From assembly GCA_029953675.1 (NCBI GenBank), contig JAMWBK010000006.1, positions 1,736,001-1,800,000 on the forward strand: 64,000 bases of DNA, given 5' to 3'. The notes under the pieces are model-generated. The model did no database searches and was not told the DNA's origin. It saw only the letters and a program-made list of their open reading frames with translations. The DNA comes from Rhodosorus marinus CCMP1338. Taxonomy: Eukaryota > Plantae > Rhodophyta. Position 1 is the stretch's first letter, and every line of letters begins with the position of its first letter. The translations under genes were made by a program, and so were the position numbers. Positions 3,133-38,095 of the stretch are shown one piece after another.

Positions 3133-4836
3133 TCAAAAGATAAACTCCTCGGTGTGAACTCGGGAGGCTTGGACTTTGAGCTGAGAAAGGAACTCACGAA
3201 CATCCCTTACAAACTTACCTGGCCCGCATATGTATGCTTGGTAGTCGTGATTTTCTAGTTTCAGCTTTGATTGTAGGAGTTCTCTTGTTATCCGTCCACG
3301 AACCACGCCGGGATTGATCGGTTCCTCTGGATCAGTCACGGTCGTGGTCAGTTTGAAGCTTCCGTTACTGAAATTTAGACTGGATAGCTCATCAGCAAAT
3401 GCGCGGTCCTTCTCGTGGCGCTCAGAGTGGATGAAGGTGACCTCGACGTCCGTTTCTCGAAGTGATCTCGCGATTGCCATCATCGGTGTGATACCGATGC
3501 CAGCGGAAATCAATATGACTTGTCTCGGCAACTCAGGGACTCCCGACAAGTAGGGAGAGAGCTCTCCACCCACTGCGATGAGCTGAACTTTCGGGTACCC
3601 CTCGGCCTCATGCAGATATGTAGATGCTTCTCCACCCGTCATGTGTTTCACAGTGATCTCCATCTTGTGATCGCCTGCGCTAGCCGTTGGCACGCTCGTT
3701 ATGGTCCAGGATCGCTGGAGCTCTTTCCCAGAAGGGAGCGTTAAAGTGAAAGTTGCGTACTGTCCCGGTGTATATGGAATCAATTGACTCCCCCACAACG
3801 TGAACCTTTTGGTCGTGCCTGACTCGTTCATGGCTTGGGAATCAACCAGAACCATTTCCATAGGAAACAGTCCCTTTCCCTGCATCGGAAGATCCTCACC
3901 GTGACCTCGCCCATGTGCTGGAATAACGTCTGAGTAGTCAATCATCTCCCACTTGTACGGGCTTGCACCGTGGTGAAGGACGAACTGCTTGACATGGAAT
4001 CGTATGAGACGCCCTGCCCCTTCGTATTCAGCGTTTTTCCATTCAAGAAACGCATCACCAACGACCTGAACCACATTTCCGGTACCTTCGAAGTCCACAA
4101 AAATCAACCCAGCACGAGAGCATAGCTCGAGATTTCCAAGCGTCAAAAACATTCCGTTTCCACCATACTCGGGAATCACAAGCTCCACTGCGGAGTTGAC
4201 GACGATGAATCCTGGGAACCCGCCTCTATGGCTGACGTCGCAGTGACCATTGGGGTTGAGGGTTCCCAAGAAAGTGGTGTTTGACTTCTCGATAGCCTCG
4301 ATGGCCTCCGCGGACAGACTCTTGCCACGCGTCACGGGCTTTTCCATACATTGCCTCTGCCCCACTATTCTTCGTCTCTGAATATATTTTGGACAACCAG
4401 GAATAGCTTCTGCCACGTCCAAAACATAATCCTTGTCCGGCGCATACGCTTCCAGGTTGCCATTGGCCCTATACCTTATCCTCTTTTCAAAGTCCATTAC
4501 TATTATCGCCATTCTACGATCCGAGCAGGTCCGAAAATTCGTTAAAATAGGATCTTCGGGAAGAAAAGATGTCTTTTCCCCTCTGAAAATCGCCGTATGT
4601 TCATCCGGAGCGTCAAGGAACCCCGCCGGTCCGGTGACCTCTGACACCCATGGGTAGCCATCCTCGTCCAGAGACAACGCATAAACAACCCTCTGTTCTC
4701 GGAATAATTCAAATCTTCCAACATCAATGCTGGTTCCGAGATGCAGCTGAAGCCTGTTAGCCACCGCCCGAGTCCCGTCCTTCCCCTGAGCGATACGCTC
4801 ACCCTCATGAAACAAATACAGATTTTCGCCACCCAT
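3133..4836 (-). CDS. Pyridoxamine-5'-phosphate-oxidase-like (split-barrel FMN-binding) domains fused to an FNR-type FAD/NAD(P)-binding reductase; intronless, copy 1
   Basis: FHEGE start motif, CPKYIQRR, DVSHRGGFPGF, PEYGGNGMFLTLGNLE, then PGQYA, RSWTITS, SAGIGITPMMAI, YICGPGKF. Likely start is ATG 4836 (MGGENLYLFHEGE), by comparison with the paralog. Confidence 0.85.
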   Translation of the reverse strand: MGGENLYLFHEGERIAQGKDGTRAVANRLQLHLGTSIDVGRFELFREQRVVYALSLDEDGYPWVSEVTGPAGFLDAPDEHTAIFRGEKTSFLPEDPILTNFRTCSDRRMAIIVMDFEKRIRYRANGNLEAYAPDKDYVLDVAEAIPGCPKYIQRRRIVGQRQCMEKPVTRGKSLSAEAIEAIEKSNTTFLGTLNPNGHCDVSHRGGFPGFIVVNSAVELVIPEYGGNGMFLTLGNLELCSRAGLIFVDFEGTGNVVQVVGDAFLEWKNAEYEGAGRLIRFHVKQFVLHHGASPYKWEMIDYSDVIPAHGRGHGEDLPMQGKGLFPMEMVLVDSQAMNESGTTKRFTLWGSQLIPYTPGQYATFTLTLPSGKELQRSWTITSVPTASAGDHKMEITVKHMTGGEASTYLHEAEGYPKVQLIAVGGELSPYLSGVPELPRQVILISAGIGITPMMAIARSLRETDVEVTFIHSERHEKDRAFADELSSLNFSNGSFKLTTTVTDPEEPINPGVVRGRITRELLQSKLKLENHDYQAYICGPGKFVRDVREFLSQLKVQASRVHTEEFIF

Positions 4837-5551
4837 CTTTACTATGAAATTGACCTCTACAGAGCCACACTGACACACACCTACAAGTGCATCCATTGGT
4901 ATCTTTATACATGCTCGTGTCTAGCAACGTAACGAAATACTGGTCGACATACATAGCTCCCAAAACGAGGCCCACACTTTCCTCTTGAATCAGGCTCGAA
5001 TGACTTTTGCACAAACCCAAAATAGAAAAAAACTATTTTCTAGTAGAAATTACGAAACTGTCAGGAGATGATTTGGATTGATTTGCAATCAATATCTCGC
5101 CCGGATCCGCACCGATGCGGGCAGAGCAAGTCAAGCATTGTTCCTGAAAACCCATTGCGGTCTTGCGGTGCCTTTGGGATGAAATTTTTGTCTGCTTTCT
5201 TACCCCCTTCAGTTTAATGGTTAACCCACCCAGTGCAGTCTGGCTTCGGATAAAACTTATCCCTTTTGTTTCGGACTGCCTTTACAGTGCTGGCCACACA
5301 TCCGATTCTAAAGCTATGCCAGAGGTCCGGCAGGCTCAGTCTGATCTGGGCTCGTTTTACACTGAATTACTGTGATCACAGTTTGTGGAAGGAAAAGATT
5401 TGCTCTAATTTTTAATGGCGAGTAGCGTTCGACGTCCTTTTCCATCTGGAGACTCTCTTTGCGCGCTGCGTATTAGAACCGCAAAAGCCCGTACTACGTG
5501 GATTTTCCGCGATTGTTTACGAGCTTAAATGTAATAGTTTTAGTTCTAGTT

Positions 5552-7246
5552 TTAGAAGTTGAAAGCCTCAGTATTCAGATTTTTTGAGGGAATTCCGATT
5601 TCTAGCAAAGCCTTTGACACTTCCACCATGAATCGGTCAGGACCACAAAGGTAGACTGTCCAGCTTGTAGGATCATCCCCAAGCTCGGGTTCGAGCAACT
5701 GCTTCGTAATTCTTCCTCTGACTCGATTGTCTATCAGTGTTTCTGTCGAGTCGGTCACAGTTCTAATTAGCCGCAAATGTTCGTCAGTTGACCCCCTCCT
5801 ATCTAATTCCCCACCAAACGGTCTATCCTTCTCATGACGTTCCGAATGAGTAAACACAACATCGGCATCGTTCCTAAAGGCTCTCAGTCCCCTAAGAATC
5901 GCCATCATGGGGGTTATCCCCACACCACCTGATAGCAGAGCGATTTTCTTGGGTACCTCGTCTTCGTCAATGAAAGGGCTCAAGTCACCCCCAATTCCGG
6001 TCAACGTGACTTCCATTCCAAGCTCAGCCTTATCATGGAGCCAGTTGGAAATAACACCGCCGGGCTTGCGTTTCACGCTAATCTCCATTGTCACATCCCC
6101 TCTCGTTGCGGAATTTGCGGTTTCTGACAACGTCCAAGTTCTGGTGAAGTCGCCCAGCTCCGCTACATGGAAATCGAAGCTAGCATACTGACCAGGCAGG
6201 AACTTAACTGGTCTTGGAGCAAGGAATCGAAACGTAGACACTGAATCGCTCTCCTTTACCACCTTAACCATTTTGACCTGCACCGGGAACGGCCCTGCTC
6301 GGTCCTCTGACTGATCGTGCCCAGCTATCGTGGGGTTGTAGTCTGAAACCGCATTTAGTTTCCATTCGTACGGTTCAGATCCAGTGTAGAGGCGAAACTT
6401 CTTAACTTTAAAGCGAATGGCTCTAGTGCTACCCTCCAACGTCTCCTGAGGGTCCCAGTCTGAGTGCGCCTCACCCACCACCTGCAGAATATTTCCGGAA
6501 CCCTCATAGTCGATAAACAACAACCCAGCATGATGATCAACCTCGAGGTTCCCGCTGGAATTGAACATGCCGTTCCCACGGTACTCTGGCCACATAATTT
6601 CCGAGCTGGAAGGAACTCTCACGAACCCAGGGTTTCCCCCACGTAGATTAATATCTGCTCCAGTCTCCGGATTTCTCGTTCCAAAGATTAGAGTGTCTGC
6701 CTTCTGAATCATTGCTATCGCTTCTTTGGGCAGCTCAACGCCCGCTATTGCCTCGCTACTGGAAGTGGCTCTTCTACCGACAATAGATCTCCTCTGAATA
6801 TACTTTGGACAATTCGGAAACGCCTCTGCCACTCTAACCGCTACCTTTCCATTTGAAGACTCTGTAGCAAGAAATCGTCCATTCGTGCGGTACCGCCTCC
6901 TCTTGTCGAAATCAATCGCAAGCACTCCTATCTGGGTGTCACTCTGCTCTTCGAAAATCTCCCTCACCGGGTCACCGCGCACTAGGTGATCATTACTGAC
7001 GTCTACCTGCAGCGTGGTGGGGTCGGGTGCCTGAAAAAAGCCTTTCTCGCCACTTGCCTCACTGACCCAGACGTCTCCGTCGCCATCCACTGCCGCTACG
7101 TACACCATGCGGAGGTCGCGAAAGAACTCATTCCTCCCAAATTCCAGATCTATTCTGTCGCTAATACCCCTCTTCAGCTCCTCAGCGACGCCACGAGTGC
7201 CCGCCTTCACCTGCACTGCGATCTCTCCTTCGTGAAACTCCACCAT
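5552..7246 (-). CDS. PNPOx-like + FNR-type reductase fusion flavoprotein; intronless, tandem copy 2
   Basis: MVEFHEGE, CPKYIQRR, NLRGGNPGF, PEYRGNGMFNSSGNLE, PGQYA, RTWTLS, SGGVGITPMMAI, HSERHEKDR, YLCGPDRF; colinear with 3133-4836. Confidence 0.88.
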   Translation of the reverse strand: MVEFHEGEIAVQVKAGTRGVAEELKRGISDRIDLEFGRNEFFRDLRMVYVAAVDGDGDVWVSEASGEKGFFQAPDPTTLQVDVSNDHLVRGDPVREIFEEQSDTQIGVLAIDFDKRRRYRTNGRFLATESSNGKVAVRVAEAFPNCPKYIQRRSIVGRRATSSSEAIAGVELPKEAIAMIQKADTLIFGTRNPETGADINLRGGNPGFVRVPSSSEIMWPEYRGNGMFNSSGNLEVDHHAGLLFIDYEGSGNILQVVGEAHSDWDPQETLEGSTRAIRFKVKKFRLYTGSEPYEWKLNAVSDYNPTIAGHDQSEDRAGPFPVQVKMVKVVKESDSVSTFRFLAPRPVKFLPGQYASFDFHVAELGDFTRTWTLSETANSATRGDVTMEISVKRKPGGVISNWLHDKAELGMEVTLTGIGGDLSPFIDEDEVPKKIALLSGGVGITPMMAILRGLRAFRNDADVVFTHSERHEKDRPFGGELDRRGSTDEHLRLIRTVTDSTETLIDNRVRGRITKQLLEPELGDDPTSWTVYLCGPDRFMVEVSKALLEIGIPSKNLNTEAFNF

Positions 7247-19660: not shown

Positions 19661-20734
19661 TCACTTCAGCTTGGCTCTCGTGATGTTCCTCAAAGCCCGC
19701 TTTCTTAGTTTTTCACGCATCTTCTTGAAATCAGCTTCCATCGGGTCCTCTGTATATTTGAACATCCCAAAGGCATTAAGCGTTGACAGCATAATCTTAG
19801 GAACTGGGGCGCGAACTGATATCATCTTGCCAGTAATGGATGGGAACTCAATCTCCCACGCGTGTAAATGCAACCGACACAGCGCATGAGTGCCCAGGAT
19901 TCCGGTTAAGCTTCCCTCATCGTTCGCGTCTGAGAACTTGTGGTCGCCGATTATTGGACAACCAAGCACCTGAGCGCAATGGGTTCGCAGCTGTCTCTTA
20001 CGCCCAGTCACCGGGATCATCTCGAGCCATGCTGCGGTCTTTCTTGCCAAGCCCAAGGTACGGTATTCAGTTATCGCGGGCTTTTCTTCAAGATACGATT
20101 GAATTCTCCCCTGGGCCTTTGCCGGATTGCCATGTACGATCGCCCAATACGTCTTCCTAATCCTGCTGCGGAGTTTCAACAATCTTGAGAAATACCGCGC
20201 TGCACCGATGTTACGGGCGAGAACCATAGCTCCTGTGCAGTCTTTGTCGAGGCGGTGCACAAGGCGTATAGCGTCTCTGTGCTCCCCTTGGAGACAAGCA
20301 TATTCTGTGAGTATGCTCCCTCCCCGATGTTTCCATCCTCCAGGTTGAGATTCGACTCCGGCAGGTTTATTAATGATGAAGAAGTCGTCGTCTTGGTACA
20401 AAATTGACTCTCTCACCCAGGTAGGCACTTTCGGGTAAATCAACTCCGGAGCGGCTTTTTCATCCTCATGAAACTCGAATTCGTACGGGACTAGGATTTT
20501 TTGCCCACCTCTTAACTTGGTCTTCATCTCCGTTTTTAAGCCAACCGATTCTACCTGGATCTGCCCAAGCCTTACCATTTCGGCCATGTTCCTATATGGC
20601 ATTGCTGGAAATCTCTTCCTCAGGAAATACAAAAGTCGAATGCCAGCGTCGGTGCCCGGAACCGTTAGCTTCTTGTATGAATAGGGCCTATCATAAACAT
20701 TAAGAAACCACGGAAAGACCTTTTTCATCGACAT
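19661..20734 (-). CDS. RluA-family RNA pseudouridine synthase (RluC/RluD-like, probably organellar), intronless
   Basis: ILYQDDDFFIINKPAG, catalytic RLVHRLDKDCTGAMVLAR, KTYWAIVHG, GRKRQLRTH...PIIGDHK, LHLHAWEIEFP. Confidence 0.93.
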   Translation of the reverse strand: MSMKKVFPWFLNVYDRPYSYKKLTVPGTDAGIRLLYFLRKRFPAMPYRNMAEMVRLGQIQVESVGLKTEMKTKLRGGQKILVPYEFEFHEDEKAAPELIYPKVPTWVRESILYQDDDFFIINKPAGVESQPGGWKHRGGSILTEYACLQGEHRDAIRLVHRLDKDCTGAMVLARNIGAARYFSRLLKLRSRIRKTYWAIVHGNPAKAQGRIQSYLEEKPAITEYRTLGLARKTAAWLEMIPVTGRKRQLRTHCAQVLGCPIIGDHKFSDANDEGSLTGILGTHALCRLHLHAWEIEFPSITGKMISVRAPVPKIMLSTLNAFGMFKYTEDPMEADFKKMREKLRKRALRNITRAKLK

Positions 20735-20805: not shown

Positions 20806-21720
20806 ATGCAGCAACCTGTGACCGCCTTCGCAACGTCCCCCAGGCTGAAACGCTCCCAAAGGATACCCCCGAGGACGATGTTACAAAAGTTTCAACTTGC
20901 AACGCGACGGAAAGGATCAGGTCTGAGCTCCGGATGACAACCCCCTTGTTCCAATGATGGCCGCGCACGAGCAGCTTTCAGAACTAGTATTAAAAAGCGA
21001 AACAACGCGGAGCCTTTGTAGGTCTAATTGCTGTTGAGCAATCACTATCTGAAGACGGAGAAGCCAGTTGGGGAAGTGATTCCTTGGCATCGCCCACTAC
21101 CGATTGCCCGATGCTTTTCCGTAGAGCGCTCCTATAACACTTGAATGGTCTCTGTGCAGAGATGTTCTAGTTCCTGGAAAGAATTGGAAAGGATCCTGTC
21201 CACTCCCAAGGCTCTTAGAATCGTCTCATTTCGACACGGCCCACTGAACCTTCGGCGGGTACTGGTATGAGTGCGGAATGGAAGACGGAGCCTCTATTGT
21301 TGACCCGTCCTCTGAGCTAGTGGATGTACTGGGAGATGTTTGATCGGGTAGGACTTCACTCAGAGTGACGTACGCACGGCTTCTGCGCCGCGGCAAATGC
21401 TGCTCGTCACGTTCTGTTCATTGAAAGTTTCTTTTTGACTATAAAGCACGTTCGCCAGTTTTTTTCTAATGTTATAATTTGGAGGGAATATGCTAGCTCC
21501 CTTCACGAAGACGAGAGAAACAGACGAAAACACTTTGCGCGTACTTGACAGCCTGTGTAAGTGTTGCCAGATCTGTATTGGATCGAAAGACCCACGGCTT
21601 GAATTTCTGGAGCTATGGGTTTGTAAAGCAATGACAAAAACTCTGTGTTTGATTCTGCCGTTCACTTTGTGTCAGCCGAGTCCGCAGCCGCCACTCCCTT
21701 TCCGAGCCTTTCAATTTCAT
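20806..21720 (+). CDS. Hypothetical multi-exon gene, transit-peptide-like N-terminus
   Basis: MQQPVTAFATSPRLKRSQRIPPR... followed by several short open segments bounded by gt/ag; no family recognised, structure uncertain. Confidence 0.3.
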
Positions 21721-23100
21721 GAACAATCTCCTCAACTCCGGCAAGGAAATTGACCTTCATGTGGTAGTCGTCTCCAACCGTCAGGTCTGCAGAACACAAG
21801 GAAATTGGTCGTCGATCAGGAGGATGTTCCAAAACTAAACAGTAGGATGCTAAAGGATACAACTGGTTTGTCCTTTGATGAAAAACGGGGACTCACCCAA
21901 AATTCGTGTTCCTTCTCCATTGGTTGCAACACCCCCAGCTTGTTCGATGATGAAAGCGAGTGGAGCGCATTCGCACAGCAAGTGAGCATCTGGCTTCACC
22001 AGGGCACCCCCTAGTCGATTGAAACGCACAAAGTATGGCACTCAGTAAAGAAGGTCCTCCCGTGGAGCAGTTTCTGCCGTCAACGCCTTACCGTTCGGCA
22101 TCATTAAAGCAACGTTTCCAGCCATGCATCCGGTATGGTACATCTTCACATCATGGTTGGAATCGACGTAGTTCTTAACGCCCTTCCCGAGCGGCGTGTT
22201 AGAGGAAACAATCGTCCTCTTTCCGTACACGGCGGTCGATTTTTCTTTGATGGTAAGCCTCTGATCGGGCTGCAGAAAGTACTGCATCGCAACTGGATGC
22301 AGTACGAATGAGTACAATCCGTGACCCATGGTGTAGTACAAGACTGTGGAGGGCCCGTAGACAACGAATCCGGCTGCTACTTGATCGGAGGCCTTCTGCT
22401 TGAGGTCGATGTACTTGCCCGGGAGAGATGTGGACGACTTTCTCTTGTAAATGGAGAAGATCGTTCCGCATACGGGTTGGTCCACAGCCCTGGGGTCAGC
22501 GTCCAGAGCGGAAATGCAGACAACGTAACCTCCATGAGGTACTTCCTCCGGGAAAGTCAGCGGCTGCTCGCGGCTCTTCGCCAAAATAAGACAGGAATAA
22601 CCATCATGTGCCAGAGATCTGTACAAAAGTCTCGTTGCAAACTCTGATGTTATCTGTTGCGTTCCGACCTGCCCGTATCTAACCACACCCAAATTTCCAC
22701 ATAATCCGTAAGACTTCGCGCCGACCAGCCGAGGGAATAGCTTCCAGCAGGTGCTCTTACGTTATAGTTTCAGACCCCTCCGCGACAAAAGCCGAGATTG
22801 CGTGAGTTTGGGTAGCAATATCATCGAGAAGACGCACAATCTCTCCCGTATAATCGACAGGCGATGACATAAACGTCCTCCTTACATGCGACGGGAAAAC
22901 AGTCGCCGCCTTCGATACCTTCGAGGACAGATTTCCCCCGAGGGGAGACATTGGTGACTTGAGGTGAACGTCCCTTGCAAACAAAATGCGCACAGAAGGC
23001 CCTCGTCAGAAACCAAACTAGATCTTCCATAAGGAGAGCGGAGACAACAAAAACCCAAGGATCCGTCTTAGACTTACATCATACGGGGAGCCTCTATTTG
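21662..23100 (-). CDS. FBPase class 1-fold protein with degenerate active site (probable pseudoenzyme); multi-exon, 5' end approximate
   Basis: TGEIVRLLDDIATQTHAISAFV, GGYVVCISALDAD, GTIFSIYK, QVAAGFVVYGPSTVLYYTMGHG, HLLCECAPLAFIIEQAGGVATNG, C-terminal HMKVNFLAGVEEIV; the DPLDGS and SEE metal motifs are replaced. Confidence 0.85.
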
Positions 23101-25120
23101 ACCTGAACCAAAAAAACAACACCGCAACTCCTCTCTCTCCTCAGAAAACTTGCTTCTCAATCCTAGAAAGTCTTGTGCACCCAAAGCGATCCTCTTCAAG
23201 GTCCCCCTCCCACAACGATCAACGTAGCGGAAGCAAAAACAGGGTCTCTTCTCAAAGCCAGCGATATCGGTTAAAAGGTAAACTTCCAAAATTCATTCAC
23301 CACATGTGCTTCCAAGGCACACAAAGGCTTGGTAGGCAGATACTCTTCTACCAAAACAGGCACACAAGAGCGTGTGTATTCAAAGAAGCAGTTGACGGAA
23401 AGTAGTCATCTAGTGGTGTGACGACCAGTCATCTCACCAATCTATCCCGATCGTCTTCAACTAACAGAACGTCCTCTCCCAACTCTGGTCTTCATCCGCC
23501 ACAGAAAAGGAATCCATAAAAATAGAAAAAACCCATCTGGCTGGTTATTCTCACAAAATTAAAACTCAAAATTGGACACGTGGATGATTCAATGTGGATT
23601 GACACATATATCAAAAACTAAAGCTGACATTATTGGCCATCATCAATTATATCTTGCCTTTATTTCAGAAATACTTCGTTTCATTGGCCACAAGTTCTTG
23701 AATAATGTACAAGATACTGATGTTGATCATCATTAACCAATGATTTAACCTACGGGCTAACGTTGTCGAATATAATTCGTTAAAAGTCAACTGTGGTATA
23801 GACAAAAGAGGAATTATTTGCTAAAAACCAAGATCAGAAAGATTAAAAACTAGTTGTTTTATGAGCTTAAGAACTCGCACCTTCGATTTCCTACCCTTTT
23901 GTTTTGCTTAGTATCGCCGAACTCTTCTATTTCGTTCCATTTTGCTCTGAATCGTCTAAAACAAAGCTTTCAGCTTTTTTTTAAAGAAATTAGTCAGGCC
24001 TTCACATCCTACAGTTCTCAACCACAGGTCAATATTCCCCAACCGCGCCAAGGGTAAAAAAGAAATCCCCTATTGCGCACCATACAAAAATCACCGAAGT
24101 GTTCGTTAAATTTCTTATAATTGATAGTTCCCGACGACAGCAGATGCTTATCAACCGGTGGGAACACACATGAAAAACCCTTCATCATTCCACGAATATT
24201 TTCTCTCCCACCGAAGCAAGCCAGTTTTGCTACCCCTTCCACTTCAATCCCTTATACTCCCCCTTTTAAAGTAATAATTGATAAATAACGATTCCCGAAT
24301 TCGAACCTAGGGGGGTTCTCCCACAATTCCAGGGTTTTCACCATCCTCTGATTTTTAGTAATGTTTATCACGATATGCGTCCTAATTAACGCAATTTTTT
24401 GAACTATACGGGATATAGAAGTCCAACGGATTTTGTGGATGATGTGGGACGCACAAGGGTTTGTTGAGGCCGTCATTTGTTTTTTTTAATATTTTGCCGA
24501 AATCCTTCATTTTCGATGGTCTCGATCGATACTCGCTTTTTTTTACTTTTGTTTTTAAAGTTGAAGTTCTTTTTTTTTTGATTTTGCTTCGGCCATTTGG
24601 GACGTGGCAATTTCTTCCTTAGGGGGGTTAGGGAGAGAGGAGGAGGAAGTGGAAGCGGGGCTGGTGAAGGGGGTTTATTAAGAATGCCGGATTGACTTGA
24701 TTATTATTATTTTTATCTACTATTTTGGATTTTTGCGGTTGGGGAAGCGGGCGGAGATGGAGCGGAGGGCTTGGAATGGAGAGGTGAAAGACTCCAAAAT
24801 TGACCTTTTTTGTTGTGTGGGTGGGGTAGAGATCTGTGGATGGTGAATGAACGACAAAGGAACCAGAGATTTGTTTTGGCTGGATTTTTGGAGGGGTGAG
24901 GATTAAAAACTGGTCTGGTTGTGTGTTGAATTCTCTGATGAGGCGGCTAGATTTCTGCTGTCTTTTTTTTTTTTGGGGGGGGAAGGTTGCTAGTGGGTTC
25001 TGGGGTTGGGTAAGGTTCACTGTATTTCTAAGTGGTAACGGATGAGCGTGCGGATCGGGGAGGGGAGAGGGGAAGGTGGTGAGCTGGTGGTTTTTTTTCC
25101 CTTCGTGATTTGGTGTAGGT

Positions 25121-27491
25121 ATGGTGAAGAGGAGAAAGGGCAGTATCGTTGAGGAGGAAGCGACTGCAGATAAAAAGTCGAAAATGTGTTTGGGGAACTC
25201 GGAGTATAGTGTCGTTCGCGGCCCAGCAAGCGAGGGGGAGATCAAGTTCTACTTCCAGAAGGATGGCGCTGGCATCATCAACCCGCTCAACGACATTCCT
25301 TTGTTCGCTGACAAGGAGAAGGGAATTCTCAACATGGTTGTTGAGATCCCCAAGGAGACAAACGCAAAGCTTGAGCTCAAGACTGGAGATCCGCTTTCGC
25401 CTATAATCCAGGATGAAAAGAAGGGCAAGAAGCGCTATGTGCACAACGTGTTTCCGTACAAGGGCTACATCTGGAACTATGGATGCTTCCCGCAGACGTG
25501 GGAGAATCCCACCGAGGTTCACATGGAGACAGGAGCGCTGGGAGATGGCGATCCTCTGGATGTTTGCGAAATCGGGTCCGCGATTGCCTCCGTCGGCGAG
25601 GTGAAACAGGTAAAAGTCCTCGGTGTCCTCGGAATGATCGATGAAGGAGAAATGGATTGGAAAGTAATCGTTGTCGACGTTAACGACCCGCTTGCTCCGC
25701 TTCTGAATGATGTCGAAGATCTCAAGACGTATGTGTAGATTAGAACCCCATACGCCTTCCACCCTTTCGGGGCATGGAAGCTGAAATATCACGTTGCTTA
25801 TCTCGCAGGATGATGCCAGGTCTGCTTCATGCAACGTTCTCCTGGTTCCGAACCTACAAGATTCCGGATGGAAAGCCCATAAACGTTTTCGCTTTCAGGG
25901 AAAATGTGCAGTCGGCTGAATATGCCATGGACATTGTGAAGGAATGCCATACTTCCTGGCAAATGGTCCTTGACGGAAAGCTCAAGCATAAGAAAGTAAA
26001 CCCTGCGAACACCAGCCTGAAGAACTCTTTTACGATCACGTCCGAGCAAGCAGAGGTAGGTTTGCCCATGGCGATGGACGTCCGCGGAATGGGGCCCTAG
26101 TCTAACATGTTCGATCTCCGTGCTGCAGGAGATTCTAACTCAATCTGGCAACGATATGAATGGTTCTGCGCCTAGCCTCGGTGAACGCCAAAGTTCGCTT
26201 CTCGATTTGCGGACCGTTCCCCTGCCCGACTTCCAGGCTGATAACAAGGCACTTGCTGGAAAGCCGATGATGACCTTGAAGCGGTTCTGCATGGAAATGC
26301 AGAGAAGGTAGGAGTGACTCACTGTATCTGGTAGAATGGTCGTTTGTGAACTTGCTAACTTATAGTGGGACCTGAAATCCGCTTGCCCATTTAGGTTCCC
26401 GCATGGAAGTAACGACCTTTCGCTGTTGTTGACCGAACTAGGCGTTGCATTCAAGTGCATACGCTCATTCCTCCGAGACGCTCCGAATGCGGAGTTCTCT
26501 ACTCTCCTGGAATTCGCGAACACCCAGATGCATGCATCGCTCGCCGCGTCCGGTCTTTGTTGCATGATCTTCTCCTCTCAGTACAAGACGACAATGCCGA
26601 TTGAAGAGGGAAGCGACCAGGGCAACTACATCGTCGTGTTCAACCCACTCACAGGGGCGACGGGAGGAACGCTTGGAACGATCTTCTCGGTTTATTCCCG
26701 AAAGTCCACCGCCGGAAGCTCCGGAGACTCTTTTGATCTTCTATCAAGAACGGGATATGAGCAGGTGGCGGCCGGCTATTGTATTTATGCTTCGTACACC
26801 GCGTTTGTGCTATCGATGGGATACGGCACTCACATTTTCCTACTCGACAGCATATCTGGGCATTTCGTCATCTCTCAACAGCACGTGAAGATTCCCAAAA
26901 CTGGTCCTGTGTACAGCATCAACACTGCACAGCTGAGCAATGTAAGTTGATGATTTTGTGCGTACGGAAGCTTATTCCCTGCACGCCAGAGTAGAAGCTT
27001 ACGGGGTTCTGGCTCCTACGCTTGCTGATATGACTTTTTCAGGCAAACGAGCCCATTCGTAAATTCGTTGCGGAATGCGATGAGGAATCTAGCGGCAAAT
27101 TCTATCGATACGAGGACAATGTGGTCGCGAACTTCCATCGAGTGCTTACAAGTGGAGGAGTTATGATGAAGGCTGGTCCATCAGGCGAAGACCTTGCAAC
27201 CTTCCTGGGCATGGCCGCGCCGCTGGCCTACATTGCCCGTCAGGCCGGTGGCCGAGCAAGCGTCGGGAAGAGACCTGTCCTTGAGCTCAACTCATGGTAT
27301 GCAACCTCCTTCCTGGAAAAGCTACGCGTGCACATATCTGAACCCCTGCCTCGGTTTTTTTCAGGAACCTTGACATGGCCGTGCCGCTCTACATTGGGTC
27401 TGCGGATGACGTATCTAGAATCGAGGAACTCTTCGGGGAAACCAAGCTTGAAATCCTTGTTGATCCAGACAACCACCTCAGAGTGGAGTAA
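25121..27491 (+). CDS. Fusion of family I soluble inorganic pyrophosphatase (N-terminal) and a degenerate FBPase-fold domain (C-terminal); about 6 exons
   Basis: PPase: [48 protein letters not shown]. In-frame GT-AG junctions (after ...SEQAE and after ...MQRR, acceptor 26393-26394) lead into [81 protein letters not shown]; stop TAA 27489-27491. Confidence 0.85.
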
Positions 27492-27837: not shown

Positions 27838-28797
27838 CTAAACTTCAAAGGGGTTTGTTAGCTCGCCAAGGGAGGAAGGCTGATGCTGTTGATGCCAAAT
27901 GGTGTCGTAGTAGACTTTCTCAAGGCAAAGGCCACAGGCATCAGCAGCTTTTGGAACCTTGCGCCTATCCTTAAGTGCAAAAAGCTCATCAATGTCATCT
28001 AGGCTGTATCGCTTCGACGCCACTGCGAATGACATGCCCATAACATTGCGTAGCATCCGATGAAGCGCGCCGTCGAGGTCAAACTGTACACGAAATGCTC
28101 CTTGACCTTCATCGACAAGTTCGATTGAGCGAATACACTTGACGGGCTGAACCGCCGCCACCCCCTTATTCGCACGATTAGCAAAGGACGTGAAGTCATG
28201 CGTTCCAACAAACTTGTCAAGTGCCTCTGCAAGAAGGTTCAAGTCACATTTTTGCCATTGCAGGGCTCTCCGCTGCCGTTCCAACGGGTTTACAAAACGT
28301 CCAAGCTGAAAACTGTAAGAATAAACTTTGCCCCGCGAATCGAAAATCGCGTGGAAGGGGAGCGTAGACTCTTTGCCTGTTGGAGGTCGAGCCACTTCCA
28401 TATCAGTGACCCTGACATCCGCCGCAAGCATTCGATTTAGCGCGAACTGCACTCTGACAATTTGTTCTTCATCCTGAAACTCGTCGACGTCAAAATGCGC
28501 AACCTGGCCGAGAGCGTGCACCCCAGAGTCAGTTCTCGACGCCCCTACAACTTGAGTTGGCTTCTGAAACCTCGTCGAAACCGCCTCCTGCAGAACTCCT
28601 TGGACCGATCTCGCCCCTTTCCTCGTCTGCGCTTGCCACCCTTGAAAGTTCGTTCCATCGTACAGAACCTTCATCCGCAACCGACACTTGGCAGTTCCAT
28701 TTCCAGAAGTTCCGTTCCCAATTCCGCTCGCGCTACACACCCATCCCAGAACCTTGCTTCTAACAAAAGGTCCTGAACTCCTCTCAAATCGATCCAT
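27838..28797 (-). CDS. truA: tRNA pseudouridine(38-40) synthase, TruA family, intronless
   Basis: YDGTNFQGWQ, SVQGVLQ, catalytic GASRTDSGVHALGQVAHFD, FVGTHDFTSF, LHRMLRNVMG, ADACGLCLEKVYY. Confidence 0.93.
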   Translation of the reverse strand: MDRFERSSGPFVRSKVLGWVCSASGIGNGTSGNGTAKCRLRMKVLYDGTNFQGWQAQTRKGARSVQGVLQEAVSTRFQKPTQVVGASRTDSGVHALGQVAHFDVDEFQDEEQIVRVQFALNRMLAADVRVTDMEVARPPTGKESTLPFHAIFDSRGKVYSYSFQLGRFVNPLERQRRALQWQKCDLNLLAEALDKFVGTHDFTSFANRANKGVAAVQPVKCIRSIELVDEGQGAFRVQFDLDGALHRMLRNVMGMSFAVASKRYSLDDIDELFALKDRRKVPKAADACGLCLEKVYYDTIWHQQHQPSSLGELTNPFEV

Positions 28798-35777: not shown

Positions 35778-38095
35778 TCATTCGTAAACTTCGTTGTCTG
35801 CGGGGCCTTCCACGACACCACCGTAGCTTTCCTGAAAGCCTCTGCGCCTGCGTCTGCGTTGGGCGTAAACGAAAGTAGTGGCAGCCAGCGCAGCAACTCC
35901 AAGACTAGCAAACACGATGAGGACGATCCATCCTGCAGCAAGACCGCCACCGCCACCATTGTCGCCGCCATCGCCACCATTGTCGCCGCCGTCGCCACCA
36001 TTGTCGCCGCCATCGCCACCATTGTCGCCGCCATCGCCACCATTGTCGCCATCTGCAGGGTTTGGCTCCAAAGTGACGTCAGCAGAGTCCTGCGGCGCCA
36101 AAGAAGGATTAAAAGGAGAGAAGAGCCCCGTCGAACGGAAGAGAAAGAGTACAGTTCAAGATCAGATTCGTAAAGGCTCCTCAGAATTGCCAAACCGTAA
36201 CCCGTAGGGTGCAAAAGAAACGCACCGATGGTATGTCCATCAGAACGGTGAAAACTGCATCGTAGAATTCTTGACCCTCTAACTTCTCCACCATCGCATC
36301 CGCCTGTTCCTCCTCCACGTTTACAACGAAGGTGAGGTCAGTTTGTGAAGGGGTCTCCCGATCAGCCTGAAGGTTGATCTCCACATTGTCGGATTGCACA
36401 TCTAGGGCTTCCGTGACCGCCGGTATCAGATCCGAAACTTGTACATCTTCGACCTCAAACCGACTCACACCAGTAGCCTAGAGTTTATCGCACGTAGCCA
36501 GCGACTATGGGTCAGAGGTCAGAGCTGGACACTGGCGAAAAAGGTATCCTGTGTCTATGTACGCACCGTAAAACTTTTCGACGAGTAGGCAAATCCAGCG
36601 GCAGCTTCGGACGGGAGGTCCGGCACAGGACACTCCCCTGCAAAAGCCCCCTCTGCTATCTTCCTGTAGAATCTGAATTCCCGATTCTCAAATGCGCCAG
36701 GATGGAACAATTTGATCAAGTCGTACAAGATCAGGTTTGGTTCTACAACCCCCAACTCGAAAAAGTTGTTCGAGGTGCCTTGTTCCACCTTCACCCCCTC
36801 ACTGTACGTGTCAGCATCGTTCGCCCATGCATTCCCACATTGCATAGACTCGTAGCTCGGAACTTCAGGGTAGGAAGAAGATATCGTCGCGGAATCTGCA
36901 ACTTCATTGAGTGTATTGAATCTGGTCCCAAAACTTGAGATGTTTATCCAATAGTCCGCCGATGAAAAGTTTCCGCTCATCTCTTGCGCACTCAGACTCA
37001 GTGTCGCCGGGCTCTCAGCGTCCTGGATGCGGTAGTCGACGTTGGCGTCCGCAAGAAACTGACCAATATACGAGATACCGTTTGCCACGCTCCATGTTGT
37101 GCCAAACGGATAGTTCGTCATCGCCGACGGAACACGCTCGATCGTGACTGCCAACTCTTTTGCCGCATTGTACTCTGTGTCGATCGTGGAGAAGAGCTTA
37201 TTCGCCTCAGCAATCCGGTGCAGTAGAATTCCAAAGATCTTTACGTGCTCAGCTCGTCCGAGAGGGGTGGTCTCCTCAACCTCTTGAGAGAGCAGCGCAA
37301 CGGTGGTGATCTCCGCGTCCTCGGCTTGAGCGGTGGCCAGATTCTGTTCGAAGGAATCAAGTGAGAAAGTTGTGATGATCGATACTGGAGGTGTCTCTGG
37401 CAGCTGCGCCATTGGGAACACGAAAATAATTCTCAGTCAGTTCAATTTCTTAAGAGCTCCTCCGAGCTCCCCTGCCTCATGAAGATAACTTACAACTTCA
37501 GTATTGAATAGATCCTTGAAGTTATTGCTAAAATCCGCAGCCCCAACTTCTACGATATCTCCTTCATTGAAACGCGTCCACGCGTCGCTCGATGCAATAG
37601 TTGACATTAACGGCACGGCAGCTATGGAAGCCAAACCGTTGAATTCGGGGGTGCCTATCATTCCAACGACCACCGAGTCCCCGACAAATAGGCTCGCTGC
37701 TGGTACATAGATCACAGTCCGATCGTCGTCAACTCCAGCAGGTGCATCGCATCCGCACCGAACGAACCTATACTTGAAGGTGGTGTCTTCGCGCAATGAT
37801 TCCTCCTGTTGCCGTGCCATCAACATTACGGTGAGTTACAGTCAGTCCTATTTCATCCTGGTCATCGGATCTTAAGACCAAAACTCACATCCACATCTAC
37901 GTAAGTGTTCGAAAAGTCGATTTTCGGCAGTCGCTCAGCATATTTCGCCACCACCTTCTCTTCAAAGTAGTCAACTGTCGTGTCGCAGTTGTCCACGGGA
38001 TCCAAACATCCTTGCGGTGTCTGCGGATCCTCTTGAGCGAGGGCTCCGCTCGTCAAAACCAGCACGATCAAGAGCAGCAGGCGAAACGGACCCAT
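35778..38095 (-). CDS. Type I membrane protein with periplasmic-binding-protein fold, CBA1/BtuF-like (cobalamin or metal-chelate binding); multi-exon
   Basis: Signal peptide MGPFRLLLLIVLVLTSGALA, CDTTVDYFEEKV, YRFVRCG, ETTPLGRAEHVKIFG...AEANKLFSTIDTEY, NNFFELGVVEPNLILYDLIKLFHP...FRFYRKI; then an extra acidic domain, (GDNGGDG)n linker, TM GWIVLIVFASLGVAALAATTFVYA and an Arg-rich stop-transfer tail. Confidence 0.8.
35951..36053. repeat. 21-bp coding tandem repeat, about 5 copies (GDNGGDG linker on the minus strand)
   Basis: CGCCACCATTGTCGCCGCC(A/G)T repeated. Confidence 0.92.

What the first reader, a model, noticed from the sequence alone, without database searches (positions are those of the whole stretch)
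25121..27491. Active pyrophosphatase fused to a catalytically dead FBPase-fold domain
Seen: the PPase keeps [14 protein letters not shown] and the YKGYIWNYG motif. In-frame splicing continues into an FBPase fold where DPLDGS reads NPLTGA, SEE reads SSQ, the RLLYE glutamate region reads LATFLGM, and the dynamic loop (G..NVQGE.QKKLD) is missing. Established: these acidic residues bind the catalytic metals of class 1 FBPases. Inference: the pseudo-FBPase acts as a metabolite sensor or oligomerisation module coupling sugar-phosphate status to PPi hydrolysis.
Basis: partly seen in the sequence, partly recalled or inferred. Interest (0 to 1): 0.75.

Follow-up and report, generated by a model that had tools for sequence, protein, structure and literature searches.

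The report
Pyrophosphatase fused to dead FBPase domain
This red-algal gene encodes an intact pyrophosphate-splitting enzyme joined to a sugar-phosphatase (FBPase) copy that has lost its catalytic residues; the fusion is strictly conserved in red algae, Rhodelphis and glaucophytes, so the dead half must do something, probably regulate or assemble the live half.

Summary
A six-exon gene on the + strand (25121-27491, five GT-AG introns) encodes a 653-aa protein. It matches a Rhodosorus marinus transcript-derived protein without gaps (27 substitutions), so it is one mRNA.

- **PPase half:** residues 72-254 are a eukaryote-type Family I pyrophosphatase. All 14 active-site residues are intact.
- **FBPase-like half:** residues 333-634 keep the class 1 FBPase fold (Foldseek target TM 0.84-0.89). 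They have lost the mobile loop 52-72 and the residues E97, E98, D118, D121, Y264, K274 and R276. These losses occur in all 17 family members examined.
- **Selection:** the dead domain is about as conserved as the live one (mean pairwise identity 0.73 for each; the linker is 0.36).
- **Distribution:** the fusion occurs across Rhodophyta, in Rhodelphis and in two glaucophytes. A profile search of 1.84 billion proteins found no further member.
- **Prior knowledge:** databases already name it as a fusion. I found no paper on it.
poorly supported, because the 6-phosphate site is largely gone.
- **Favoured reading:** conserved interface and AMP-loop residues, plus an invariant basic-x-x-Ser motif in the disordered linker, point to an oligomerisation or regulatory module, possibly controlled by phosphorylation.

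In passing: a second, stand-alone degenerate FBPase-like gene lies head-to-head 2 kb upstream.

The parts
25121..27491 (+). Whole coding region of the PPase/FBPase-like fusion gene. Exons: 25121-25728, 25809-26055, 26129-26307, 26395-26941, 27043-27296, 27365-27491 (stop included). Product 653 aa.
   Evidence: Splice sites and translation. Gapless match to transcript-derived P0001.
25334..25962 (+). Family I (eukaryote-type) inorganic pyrophosphatase domain, aa 72-254. It spans intron 1 (25729-25808).
   Evidence: Pfam PF00719 E = 2e-45. Yeast PPase PDB hits E = 1e-90. All 14 active-site residues kept. Foldseek target TM 0.80-0.83.
26047..26266 (+). Inter-domain linker, aa 283-331, spanning intron 2. 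Predicted disordered and poorly conserved except for one motif.
   Evidence: AF2 pLDDT below 50 for aa 294-329. Mean pairwise identity 0.36.
26195..26197 (+). Codon of Ser308 within R-Q-S-S-L-L-D-L. This is a candidate regulatory phosphorylation site (basic at -3, hydrophobic at +1 and +4).
   Evidence: In 41 red-algal sequences: Ser 41/41, R/K at -3 41/41, hydrophobic at -5 39/41, hydrophobic at +4 40/41. Absent in the two glaucophytes. That it is phosphorylated is an inference.
26270..27431 (+). FBPase-fold pseudoenzyme domain, aa 333-634. It spans introns 3, 4 and 5.
   Evidence: Pfam PF00316 E = 1e-29 and PF18913 E = 3e-21. PDB FBPases E about 1e-38. Foldseek target TM 0.84-0.89. Catalytic residues lost.
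26573..26581 (+). S-S-Q in place of S96-E97-E98, the metal ligands and general base of class 1 FBPase.
   Evidence: Alignment to pig FBPase 1cnq, whose sequence was verified.
26642..26659 (+). N-P-L-T-G-A in place of D118-P-L-D121-G-S. A 4-residue deletion follows.
27193..27213 (+). L-A-T-F-L-G-M in place of K274-L-R276-L-L-Y-E280.
   Evidence: K274 to Leu is invariant in the 43-sequence alignment.
21662..23082 (-). Neighbouring divergently transcribed gene. It encodes a stand-alone, separately degenerate FBPase-like protein of 347 aa. Exons: 23082-23078, 22973-22761, 22678-22092, 22010-21897, 21786-21662. It is context, not shown to be functionally linked.
   Evidence: tblastn hit. Gene model with 12 substitutions against P0249. 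Pfam. Red-algal family. Residue table.

Best explanation
**Shown.**
- The gene makes a single 653-aa polypeptide.
- Its N-terminal half is a catalytically competent eukaryote-type Family I soluble pyrophosphatase.
- Its C-terminal half is a class 1 FBPase fold that cannot bind the three catalytic metals and has lost the mobile catalytic loop.
- This pseudoenzyme domain is under purifying selection about as strong as that on the PPase.
- The fusion, with the same losses, is shared by Rhodophyta, Rhodelphis and Glaucophyta, so the degeneration is ancient.

**Inferred.**
- The protein is cytosolic. The N-terminus is short and rich in acidic and basic residues, and no orthologue has a transit-peptide-like extension.
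- It hydrolyses the PPi released by cytosolic nucleotide-sugar synthesis. In exactly these lineages that synthesis feeds cytosolic floridean starch.
- The FBPase-derived domain acts as a non-catalytic regulatory and oligomerisation module. It keeps FBPase-type subunit contacts (K42 equivalent invariant, remodelled 190-192 segment) and so assembles PPase units into a higher-order oligomer.
- Its strictly conserved but remodelled AMP-loop region ([12 protein letters not shown]113, the R-K-S loop) may still receive a phosphorylated or nucleotide ligand.
- The disordered linker carries an invariant hydrophobic-x-R/K-x-x-S-x-x-x-hydrophobic motif. This fits an AMPK/SnRK1- or CDPK-type phosphosite and would give a second layer of control.
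For: - **Gene model and single transcript:**
- **Domains:**
- **PPase active site:** 14 of 14 residues kept in 13 sequences. The domain shows 52% identity to yeast PPase over the 260 columns of the Foldseek alignment; the sequence match to yeast PPase chains has E = 1e-90.
- **FBPase sites lost** in all 17 fused members but kept in 9 canonical controls.
- **Fold retained:** AF2 pLDDT is mostly 85-95 in aa 333-634, and Foldseek target TM is 0.84-0.89.
- **Equal conservation of both domains** and a variable linker.
- **Conserved positions:** 106 positions in the dead domain are at least 95% conserved. Of these, 46 are family-specific. They cluster in the H1-loop-H2/AMP-loop region, the 138-153 loop, positions 190-192, the filled-in former active site and the C-terminal lobe.
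- **Linker motif statistics:**
- **Taxonomic spread:**
- **Exhaustive profile search:** no other lineage holds the family.
- **Background:** floridean starch is cytosolic in red algae and glaucophytes (PMC4919380).
Against: - No biochemical data exist for any member. Nine literature searches found nothing.
- The monomer model gives no confident inter-domain packing (pTM 0.53). No multimer prediction was possible, so oligomerisation is unproven.
- Several AMP-contact residues are changed: G28 to N, K112 to N, and R140 to S or Y unless the alignment shifts by one residue. Nucleotide binding may therefore be lost.
- The linker motif is absent in glaucophytes, so it cannot be the ancestral reason for the fusion.
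- Cytosolic location is inferred from the sequence only.
- The link to starch or UDP-glucose metabolism is a correlation of phyletic patterns, not a test.
Confidence: 0.6

Rival explanations
1. Docking or metabolon adaptor. The dead FBPase domain binds no small ligand. Instead it hetero-oligomerises with true FBPase subunits or with the stand-alone FBPase-like protein, or it binds FBPase partners such as aldolase. This would tether PPase to the cytosolic triose-phosphate to hexose-phosphate to UDP-glucose pathway.
For: - The FBPase fold and the interface residue K42 are retained.
- Red algae hold a second non-catalytic FBPase-like family, encoded 2 kb away in this genome.
- Both FBPase and PPase make steps of the same cytosolic gluconeogenic route irreversible (established biochemistry).
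Against: - The adjacency to the stand-alone gene is not kept in Rhodosorus marinus GCA_029953675.1. In Porphyridium and the Gracilariales the two genes lie on contigs of different length, so on different contigs.
- The two FBPase-like families are less similar to each other (about 29%) than each is to canonical FBPases.
- There are no interaction data.
Confidence: 0.22
2. The degenerate active site still binds fructose 1,6- or 2,6-bisphosphate or fructose 6-phosphate, and so couples sugar-phosphate levels to PPi hydrolysis.
For: R243 is invariant, and Y244 and N212 (as N, D or S) are partly kept. The former active-site segment is conserved within the family.
Against: Across the family K274 is an invariant Leu, Y264 and Y215 are lost, R276 is lost, S123/S124/N125 are lost, a 4-residue deletion sits beside the 1-phosphate site, and loop 52-72 is deleted. 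The pocket looks filled with hydrophobic or small residues.
Confidence: 0.1
3. A true bifunctional enzyme. The C-terminal domain still hydrolyses a phosphate ester, using a different catalytic arrangement.
For: E280 is kept as Glu in florideophytes, Galdieria, glaucophytes and Rhodelphis. The domain is strongly conserved.
Against: E97, E98, D118, D121, D74 and loop residues N64 and D68 are absent in every member. E280 itself is M or V in Rhodosorus, Porphyridium purpureum and the Cyanidium group. No set of acidic ligands remains for even one metal site.
Confidence: 0.04
4. A gene-model artefact: two adjacent genes are wrongly joined.
For: Two database entries contain only the FBPase-like part (P0135 from MMETSP, P0136 from Cyanidiococcus).
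Against: - Full-length fusion proteins derive from independent transcriptomes: Rhodosorus and Porphyridium-type MMETSP entries, an Agarophyton TSA entry, Cyanoptyche, and Rhodelphis Trinity. They also come from independent genome annotations.
- The window model equals P0001 without gaps.
- P0135 starts inside the linker and ends exactly at the exon 5 / intron 5 boundary (LELNSW). This looks like an incompletely spliced transcript.
Confidence: 0.01

Closest known systems
Eukaryotic Family I soluble inorganic pyrophosphatase (yeast IPP1, human PPA1)
   Same: The N-terminal half matches yeast PPase chains with E = 1e-90 and is 52% identical to yeast PPase over the 260 columns of the Foldseek alignment. 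It has the same fold and all 14 active-site residues.
   Different: It carries a C-terminal extension of about 370 residues (linker plus FBPase-like domain). No characterised Family I PPase known to me has such an extension (own knowledge).
Class 1 fructose-1,6-bisphosphatase (pig/human FBP1, plant and bacterial FBPases)
   Same: Both Pfam domains score above threshold. Foldseek target TM is 0.84-0.89 with about 30% identity. The core-fold residues and R243 are kept.
   Different: The metal ligands, the catalytic loop 52-72, and K274, R276 and Y264 are lost. It is fused behind a PPase. It forms a separate clade: family members score at least 279 bits against at most 178 bits for any canonical FBPase.
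CBS-domain-containing Family II pyrophosphatases (nucleotide-regulated bacterial PPases)
   Same: The concept is the same: a PPase carrying an extra non-catalytic domain that could confer allosteric control. This is a functional analogy drawn from my own knowledge.
   Different: The catalytic fold is unrelated (DHH/DHHA2) and the regulatory fold is unrelated (CBS/DRTGG). Neither was found here by Pfam. Regulation is unproven here.
ATP sulfurylase / APS kinase / pyrophosphatase fusion of oomycetes, diatoms and Emiliania
   Same: It is a Family I PPase domain fused to other enzymes, in that case to remove the PPi by-product of the pathway (PMC2705460).
   Different: There the partner domains are active enzymes that produce the PPi. 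Here the partner is a dead phosphatase that neither makes nor uses PPi.
Stand-alone red-algal FBPase-like proteins, databased as 'fructose-1,6-bisphosphatase class 1' (e.g. Porphyridium purpureum P0259, Chondrus crispus P0306, and window gene 21662-23082)
   Same: They have an FBPase fold with degenerate catalytic residues, are restricted to red algae among the named hits, and are uncharacterised.
   Different: The pattern of loss is different: E97 to K/R, D118 to S, with D121 and E280 kept and R243 lost. They are not fused. They share only about 29% identity with the fused domain, and each family is closer to canonical FBPases than to the other.

Membership tests
Family I soluble inorganic pyrophosphatase (PF00719) | Profile match above the curated threshold | tested here: met
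   154.7 bits against a cut-off of 23.5, full-length profile match 1-153.
Family I soluble inorganic pyrophosphatase (PF00719) | The 14 conserved active-site residues (yeast E48, K56, E58, R78, Y89, Y93, D115, D117, D120, D147, D152, K154, Y192, K193) | tested here: met
   All are present in the window protein (E75 ... K220) and in 11 orthologues.
Family I soluble inorganic pyrophosphatase (PF00719) | Signature D-x-D-x-x-D (PROSITE-type motif, recalled from memory) | tested here: met
   D142-G-D144-P-L-D147-V.
Family I soluble inorganic pyrophosphatase (PF00719) | PPase fold | tested here: met
   Foldseek against yeast and human PPase: target TM 0.80-0.83, rmsd about 3 A.
Family I soluble inorganic pyrophosphatase (PF00719) | Mg-dependent PPi hydrolysis | not testable with these tools
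   Needs an enzyme assay.
Class 1 fructose-1,6-bisphosphatase (PF00316 + PF18913) | Profile matches above the curated thresholds, and the FBPase fold | tested here: met
   104 bits against 34.8 and 76 bits against 27. Target TM 0.84-0.89.
Class 1 fructose-1,6-bisphosphatase (PF00316 + PF18913) | Metal-binding and catalytic acidic residues E97, E98, D118, D121, E280, D74 | tested here: not met
   In the window protein they read S, Q, N, T, M, L. All are lost in 17 of 17 fused members, except E280, which is kept in some. All are kept in 9 of 9 canonical controls.
Class 1 fructose-1,6-bisphosphatase (PF00316 + PF18913) | Mobile catalytic loop 52-72 with N64 and D68 | tested here: not met
   A 14-residue deletion in every fused member.
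Class 1 fructose-1,6-bisphosphatase (PF00316 + PF18913) | Substrate phosphate-binding residues (S123, S124, N125, Y215, Y264, K274, R276; R243 from the neighbouring subunit) | tested here: not met
   Only R243 is invariant. K274 is an invariant Leu, and the rest are lost or variable.
Class 1 fructose-1,6-bisphosphatase (PF00316 + PF18913) | AMP allosteric site (T27, G28, E29, T31, K112, Y113, R140) | tested here: inconclusive
   The positions read S, N, D, S, N, Y and S/Y. R447 would match R140 if the alignment shifts by one residue. The region is strictly conserved but altered.
Red-algal/glaucophyte PPase-FBPase-like fusion family (database entries, uncharacterised) | Domain order PPase, linker, degenerate FBPase, with high similarity over the full length | tested here: met
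   The window protein is 96% identical to R. marinus P0001 over 100% of its length. It is 45-73% identical to Porphyridium, Galdieria, Cyanidium, Agarophyton, Cyanophora and Cyanoptyche proteins.
CBS-PPase (regulated Family II PPase) | DHH/DHHA2 catalytic domains with a CBS insert | tested here: not met
   The Pfam scan found no such domains. This is an analogy only.

The most novel reading that the evidence does not exclude
This would be the first allosterically controlled Family I pyrophosphatase.

- An FBPase-derived receiver domain, dead for more than a billion years, would still use its remodelled AMP-loop pocket to sense an adenine nucleotide or another phosphometabolite.
- An SnRK1/AMPK-type kinase would phosphorylate the invariant linker serine (Ser308).
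- Together these would gate cytosolic PPi removal, and with it the pull on UDP-glucose, floridoside and floridean-starch synthesis.
- The fusion would also be a rare genomic character shared by Rhodophyta, Rhodelphis and Glaucophyta but not by green plants.
Probability: 0.2. Interest if true: 0.75.

Novelty: new variant of a known kind. Interest (0 to 1): 0.5.

Why it matters
**Regulation of PPi removal.** Soluble Family I PPases are usually treated as unregulated housekeeping enzymes. Cytosolic PPi removal sets the direction of nucleotide-sugar and polymer synthesis. A PPase welded for more than a billion years to a conserved pseudo-FBPase suggests that red algae and glaucophytes regulate or organise this step differently from plants, fungi and animals. 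These are exactly the two algal groups that make starch in the cytosol.

**Pseudoenzyme evolution.** This is a clean natural example of a pseudoenzyme domain kept under strong selection.

**Phylogeny.** The fusion is a rare genomic character, present in Rhodophyta, Rhodelphis and Glaucophyta and absent from Viridiplantae in the libraries searched. It is relevant to deep Archaeplastida relationships.

**Annotation.** Database entries that call these proteins (and the stand-alone neighbour family) 'fructose-1,6-bisphosphatase' are probably wrong. They would inflate FBPase counts in metabolic reconstructions of red algae.

Tried and rejected
1. **Two separate genes or transcripts.** Rejected. Several independent transcriptome-derived full-length proteins exist, and the window model matches P0001 without gaps. 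The FBPase-only entry P0135 ends exactly at an exon/intron boundary and starts inside the linker, so it looks like an unspliced fragment. P0136 looks like a split gene model.
2. **Active FBPase.** Rejected on the residue table.
3. **Plastid targeting.** The N-terminal 26-residue extension is rich in K, R and E. Orthologues such as P0002 and Galdieria have no extension at all. I judged a transit peptide unlikely but ran no predictor.
4. **Conserved gene pair with the neighbouring FBPase-like gene.** Rejected. The other Rhodosorus genome has different neighbours, and in three other red algae the two genes lie on different contigs.
5. **Common origin of the two pseudo-FBPase families as one dead lineage.** Not supported. 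Each is closer to canonical FBPases than to the other. No proper phylogeny was made.
6. **Origin of the FBPase-like domain.** Bacterial FBPases score higher against it (about 170-187 bits) than pig FBPase does (130-142 bits). Long branches make this inconclusive, so I left it open.
7. **P0369.** This 766-aa library hit scored 294 bits but proved to be a tandem double FBPase, not a family member.
8. **Literature.** Nine full-text searches found no paper on the fusion or on FBPase pseudoenzymes. The only hit with a PPase fusion concerns the sulfate-assimilation enzyme of oomycetes.
9. **Inter-domain contact.** The monomer AF2 model has pTM 0.53 and a disordered linker. It gives no usable information on how the domains touch.
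Full report
**What is in the sequence.**
- The window is eukaryotic nuclear DNA, about 47% G+C, with short GT-AG introns. Its other genes are ordinary ones: clathrin heavy chain, a P-type ATPase, ALG11 and an RPE65-type oxygenase.
- On the + strand, six exons give an uninterrupted 1,962-nt reading frame. They are 25121-25728, 25809-26055, 26129-26307, 26395-26941, 27043-27296 and 27365-27491.
- All five introns (80, 73, 87, 101 and 68 nt) start with GT and end with AG. An in-frame TGA lies 15 nt upstream of the ATG.
- The 653-aa product has the same length as P0001, a protein derived from a Rhodosorus marinus MMETSP transcript. It aligns to P0001 without gaps and differs at 27 residues.
The refutation condition 'two separate transcripts' does not hold.

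**Domains.**
- Pfam finds Pyrophosphatase (aa 72-254, E = 2e-45), FBPase N-terminal domain (aa 333-506, E = 1e-29) and FBPase C-terminal domain (aa 511-634, E = 3e-21). All are well above the curated cut-offs.
- An AlphaFold2 model built on 43 family sequences has mean pLDDT 74.9. Blocks of the FBPase-like domain are mostly at 85-95, and the linker (aa 294-329) is disordered with pLDDT below 50.
- Foldseek against the PDB returns human and pig FBPases (target TM 0.84-0.89, about 30% identity). It also returns yeast and human PPases (target TM 0.80-0.83, about 50% identity).

**The PPase half is intact.**
- I aligned it to yeast PPase, taking the yeast sequence from the PDB alignment.
- All 14 active-site residues are present in the window protein and in 11 orthologues spanning red algae and glaucophytes. 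These are E48, K56, E58, R78, Y89, Y93, D115, D117, D120, D147, D152, K154, Y192 and K193.

**The FBPase half is dead, and was already dead in the common ancestor.**
- I used pig FBPase as the ruler. Nine canonical FBPases served as controls.
- The losses below hold for all 17 fused-family sequences:

| Pig FBPase feature | State in the fused family |
|---|---|
| Loop 52-72 (with N64, D68) | shortened by 14 residues |
| D74 | variable |
| E97 | S, T or A |
| E98 | variable |
| D118 | N, T or S |
| D121 | T, V, C, L, I, M or A |
| After position 124 | 4-residue deletion |
| S123, S124, N125 | lost |
| Y264 | K, L, M or A |
| K274 | Leu, invariant |
| R276 | variable |
| E280 | Glu in florideophytes, Galdieria, glaucophytes and Rhodelphis; M or V in Rhodosorus, Porphyridium purpureum and the Cyanidium group |

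- The variability of E280 shows it is no longer constrained as a metal ligand.
- All nine canonical controls keep every one of these residues (position 215 is N in most of the bacterial controls).
- No set of ligands remains for even one of the three catalytic metals.

**The dead domain is nonetheless under strong constraint.**
- In the 43-sequence alignment, mean pairwise identity is 0.73 for the PPase region and 0.73 for the FBPase-like region. It is 0.36 for the linker and 0.26 for the N-terminus.
- 106 positions of the FBPase-like domain are at least 95% conserved. Sixty are shared with canonical FBPases and represent the fold core; they include K42, Y113, R243 and H253.
- The other 46 are family-specific. 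They cluster in five places:
  - helix H1, the loop and helix H2, which is the AMP-binding loop of FBPase (here [11 protein letters not shown]);
  - the 138-153 loop (R-K-S..G..G-D..D-L-L.R);
  - positions 190-192 (S-G-H in place of I-G-E);
  - the filled-in former active site (G-P...L...A-A-P);
  - the C-terminal lobe.
- From my own knowledge of pig FBPase, K42 and E192 lie at the C1-C4 subunit interface, and residues 27-31, 112-113 and 140 bind AMP.
- The pattern therefore points to retained subunit contacts and a remodelled but constrained allosteric-site region, rather than a retained sugar-phosphate pocket.

**Distribution.**
- Proteins with all three Pfam domains come from these organisms:
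  - Rhodophyta: Rhodosorus, Porphyridium, Galdieria, Cyanidium and Cyanidiococcus, Agarophyton, Gracilaria, and many unnamed metagenomic or Logan contigs;
  - the non-photosynthetic red-algal sister Rhodelphis limneticus;
  - the glaucophytes Cyanophora paradoxa and Cyanoptyche gloeocystis.
- After these, the hit list drops to ordinary PPases of fungi and animals.
- A profile of the FBPase-like domain was searched against 1.84 billion representative proteins. It recovered only the red-algal representative (560 bits), Rhodelphis (350 bits) and fragments. The next hits were canonical FBPases at 215 bits or less.
- The family is thus confined to Rhodophyta, Rhodelphis and Glaucophyta in these libraries. 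No green-plant member was seen.

**A conserved motif in the linker.**
- The linker is otherwise variable and predicted disordered.
- All 41 red-algal sequences carry a serine (Ser308 here, nt 26195-26197) with these neighbours:
  - R or K at -3 in 41 of 41;
  - a hydrophobic residue at -5 in 39 of 41;
  - a hydrophobic residue at +1 in 41 of 41 and at +4 in 40 of 41;
  - then I-P-P-P-E-F.
- The typical form is L-G-R-S-N-S-W-L-D-M. The window reads [10 protein letters not shown].
- This fits the AMPK/SnRK1/CDPK-type substrate consensus (own knowledge). Phosphorylation is an inference.
- The two glaucophytes lack the motif.

**How it most likely works.**
- Shown: one polypeptide, a competent PPase, a non-catalytic FBPase fold under purifying selection, ancient origin.
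- Inferred, location: the protein is cytosolic, because no orthologue has a transit-peptide-like extension.
- Inferred, role of the C-terminal domain: it serves as an oligomerisation and regulatory module for the PPase, possibly with a ligand at the former AMP site. In red algae, phosphorylation of the linker may add control.
- Inferred, metabolic context: red algae and glaucophytes make floridean starch in the cytosol (PMC4919380), whereas green plants make starch in plastids. The phyletic pattern of the fusion matches that difference. A cytosolic PPase that pulls nucleotide-sugar formation is a reasonable context. This is a correlation only.
- I put 0.6 on this overall reading. Within it, the 'active PPase plus dead but functional FBPase-like domain' part is about 0.9.

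**Rivals.**
- A pure docking role, through hetero-oligomers with real FBPase or with the stand-alone FBPase-like protein: 0.22.
It is weakened by the loss of K274, Y264, Y215, R276 and S123-N125.
- Residual phosphatase activity: 0.04.
- Gene-model artefact: 0.01.

**Comparison with what is known.**
- The N-terminal half passes every sequence and structure test for a Family I PPase.
- The C-terminal half is a structural member of the class 1 FBPase superfamily but fails the defining catalytic features. It should not be filed as an FBPase.
- The nearest functional analogy is the CBS-domain Family II PPases, which are regulated by nucleotides (own knowledge), but the folds are unrelated.
- Another PPase fusion is the ATP sulfurylase / APS kinase / PPase protein of oomycetes and diatoms (PMC2705460). 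It joins active enzymes of one pathway, unlike this case.

**Novelty.**
- The architecture is not new to databases. NCBI names a Gracilaria domingensis protein 'inorganic pyrophosphatase fused with fructose-1 6-bisphosphatase'. JGI names one 'fructose-1,6-bisphosphatase/inorganic pyrophosphatase'.
- Nine full-text searches found no paper that describes the fusion, its pseudoenzyme nature or its function. The searchable library is incomplete, however.
- I rate it a new variant of a known kind, with interest 0.5. It is real, ancient and testable, but visible in public annotation, and its mechanism is unproven.

**Noticed next door.**
- About 2 kb upstream, on the opposite strand, lies a five-exon gene (23082-21662). 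It encodes a 347-aa stand-alone FBPase-like protein that differs from R. marinus P0249 at 12 residues.
- It belongs to a second red-algal family, databased as 'fructose-1,6-bisphosphatase class 1' in Porphyridium, Chondrus and the Gracilariales.
- Its pattern of degeneration is different: E97 to K or R, D118 to S, S123 to D, the 6-phosphate site lost, D121 and E280 kept.
- The two families are each closer to canonical FBPases than to each other.
- Their adjacency is not conserved in another Rhodosorus genome.

Noticed in passing
window 21662-23082 (- strand): A second, stand-alone FBPase-like gene lies head-to-head with the fusion gene; the two start codons are 2,038 bp apart. It has five exons, including a 5-nt first coding exon (ATGAT), and encodes 347 aa. 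Its family occurs in many red algae and is databased as 'fructose-1,6-bisphosphatase class 1'. Its catalytic residues are degenerate in a different way: E97 to K/R, D118 to S, R243/Y264/K274/R276 lost, D121 and E280 kept. It is probably another pseudoenzyme or has altered chemistry.
   Followed up: partly
window 25121-25183 (aa 1-21 of the fusion protein): The N-terminus reads [21 protein letters not shown], which resembles a bipartite nuclear localisation signal. Porphyridium-type orthologues (P0028, P0030) also start with basic patches, while P0002 and Galdieria have no such extension. Nuclear targeting was not tested.
   Followed up: no
P0001 and P0002; locus L001: Two entries both named Rhodosorus marinus differ strongly. 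The window protein is 96% identical to the MMETSP one but only about 70% identical to the one from genome GCA_029953675.1, and the flanking genes differ. The name probably covers deeply divergent lineages.
   Followed up: partly
P0135 (MMETSP) against window 27296/27297: A 312-aa 'complete' ORF from a related alga holds only the FBPase-like part. It starts inside the linker and ends exactly at the exon 5 / intron 5 boundary (…LELNSW). It is most simply an incompletely spliced transcript, not a separate gene.
   Followed up: partly
window 19661-20734 (-) and 27838-28797 (-): Two different pseudouridine synthase genes flank the two FBPase-like genes: an RluA-type (PF00849) and a TruA-type (PF01416). 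This is probably coincidence.
   Followed up: no
window 3133-4896 (-) and 5552-7246 (-): Two adjacent same-strand ORFs both carry an oxidoreductase NAD-binding domain. One also has a PNPOx-like domain and the other an FAD_binding_6 domain. They may be a tandem pair of flavoprotein reductases.
   Followed up: no
window 36555-37421 (-): This ORF has a weak match to the bacterial periplasmic binding protein family PF01497 (E = 2.4e-07). That is unusual for a eukaryotic nuclear gene. It could be an organelle-targeted or horizontally acquired gene.
   Followed up: no
window 24560-25100: The upstream region of the fusion gene, shared with the divergent neighbour, is strongly G-rich on the + strand. 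It has long T and G runs and GGAGG/GGGAG repeats.
   Followed up: no
P0369: A 766-aa protein in the representative library consists of two tandem FBPase units behind a transit-peptide-like leader. The first unit has a shortened 52-72 loop and an altered E97/E98 region. Its organism is unknown and it is unrelated to the fusion family.
   Followed up: no
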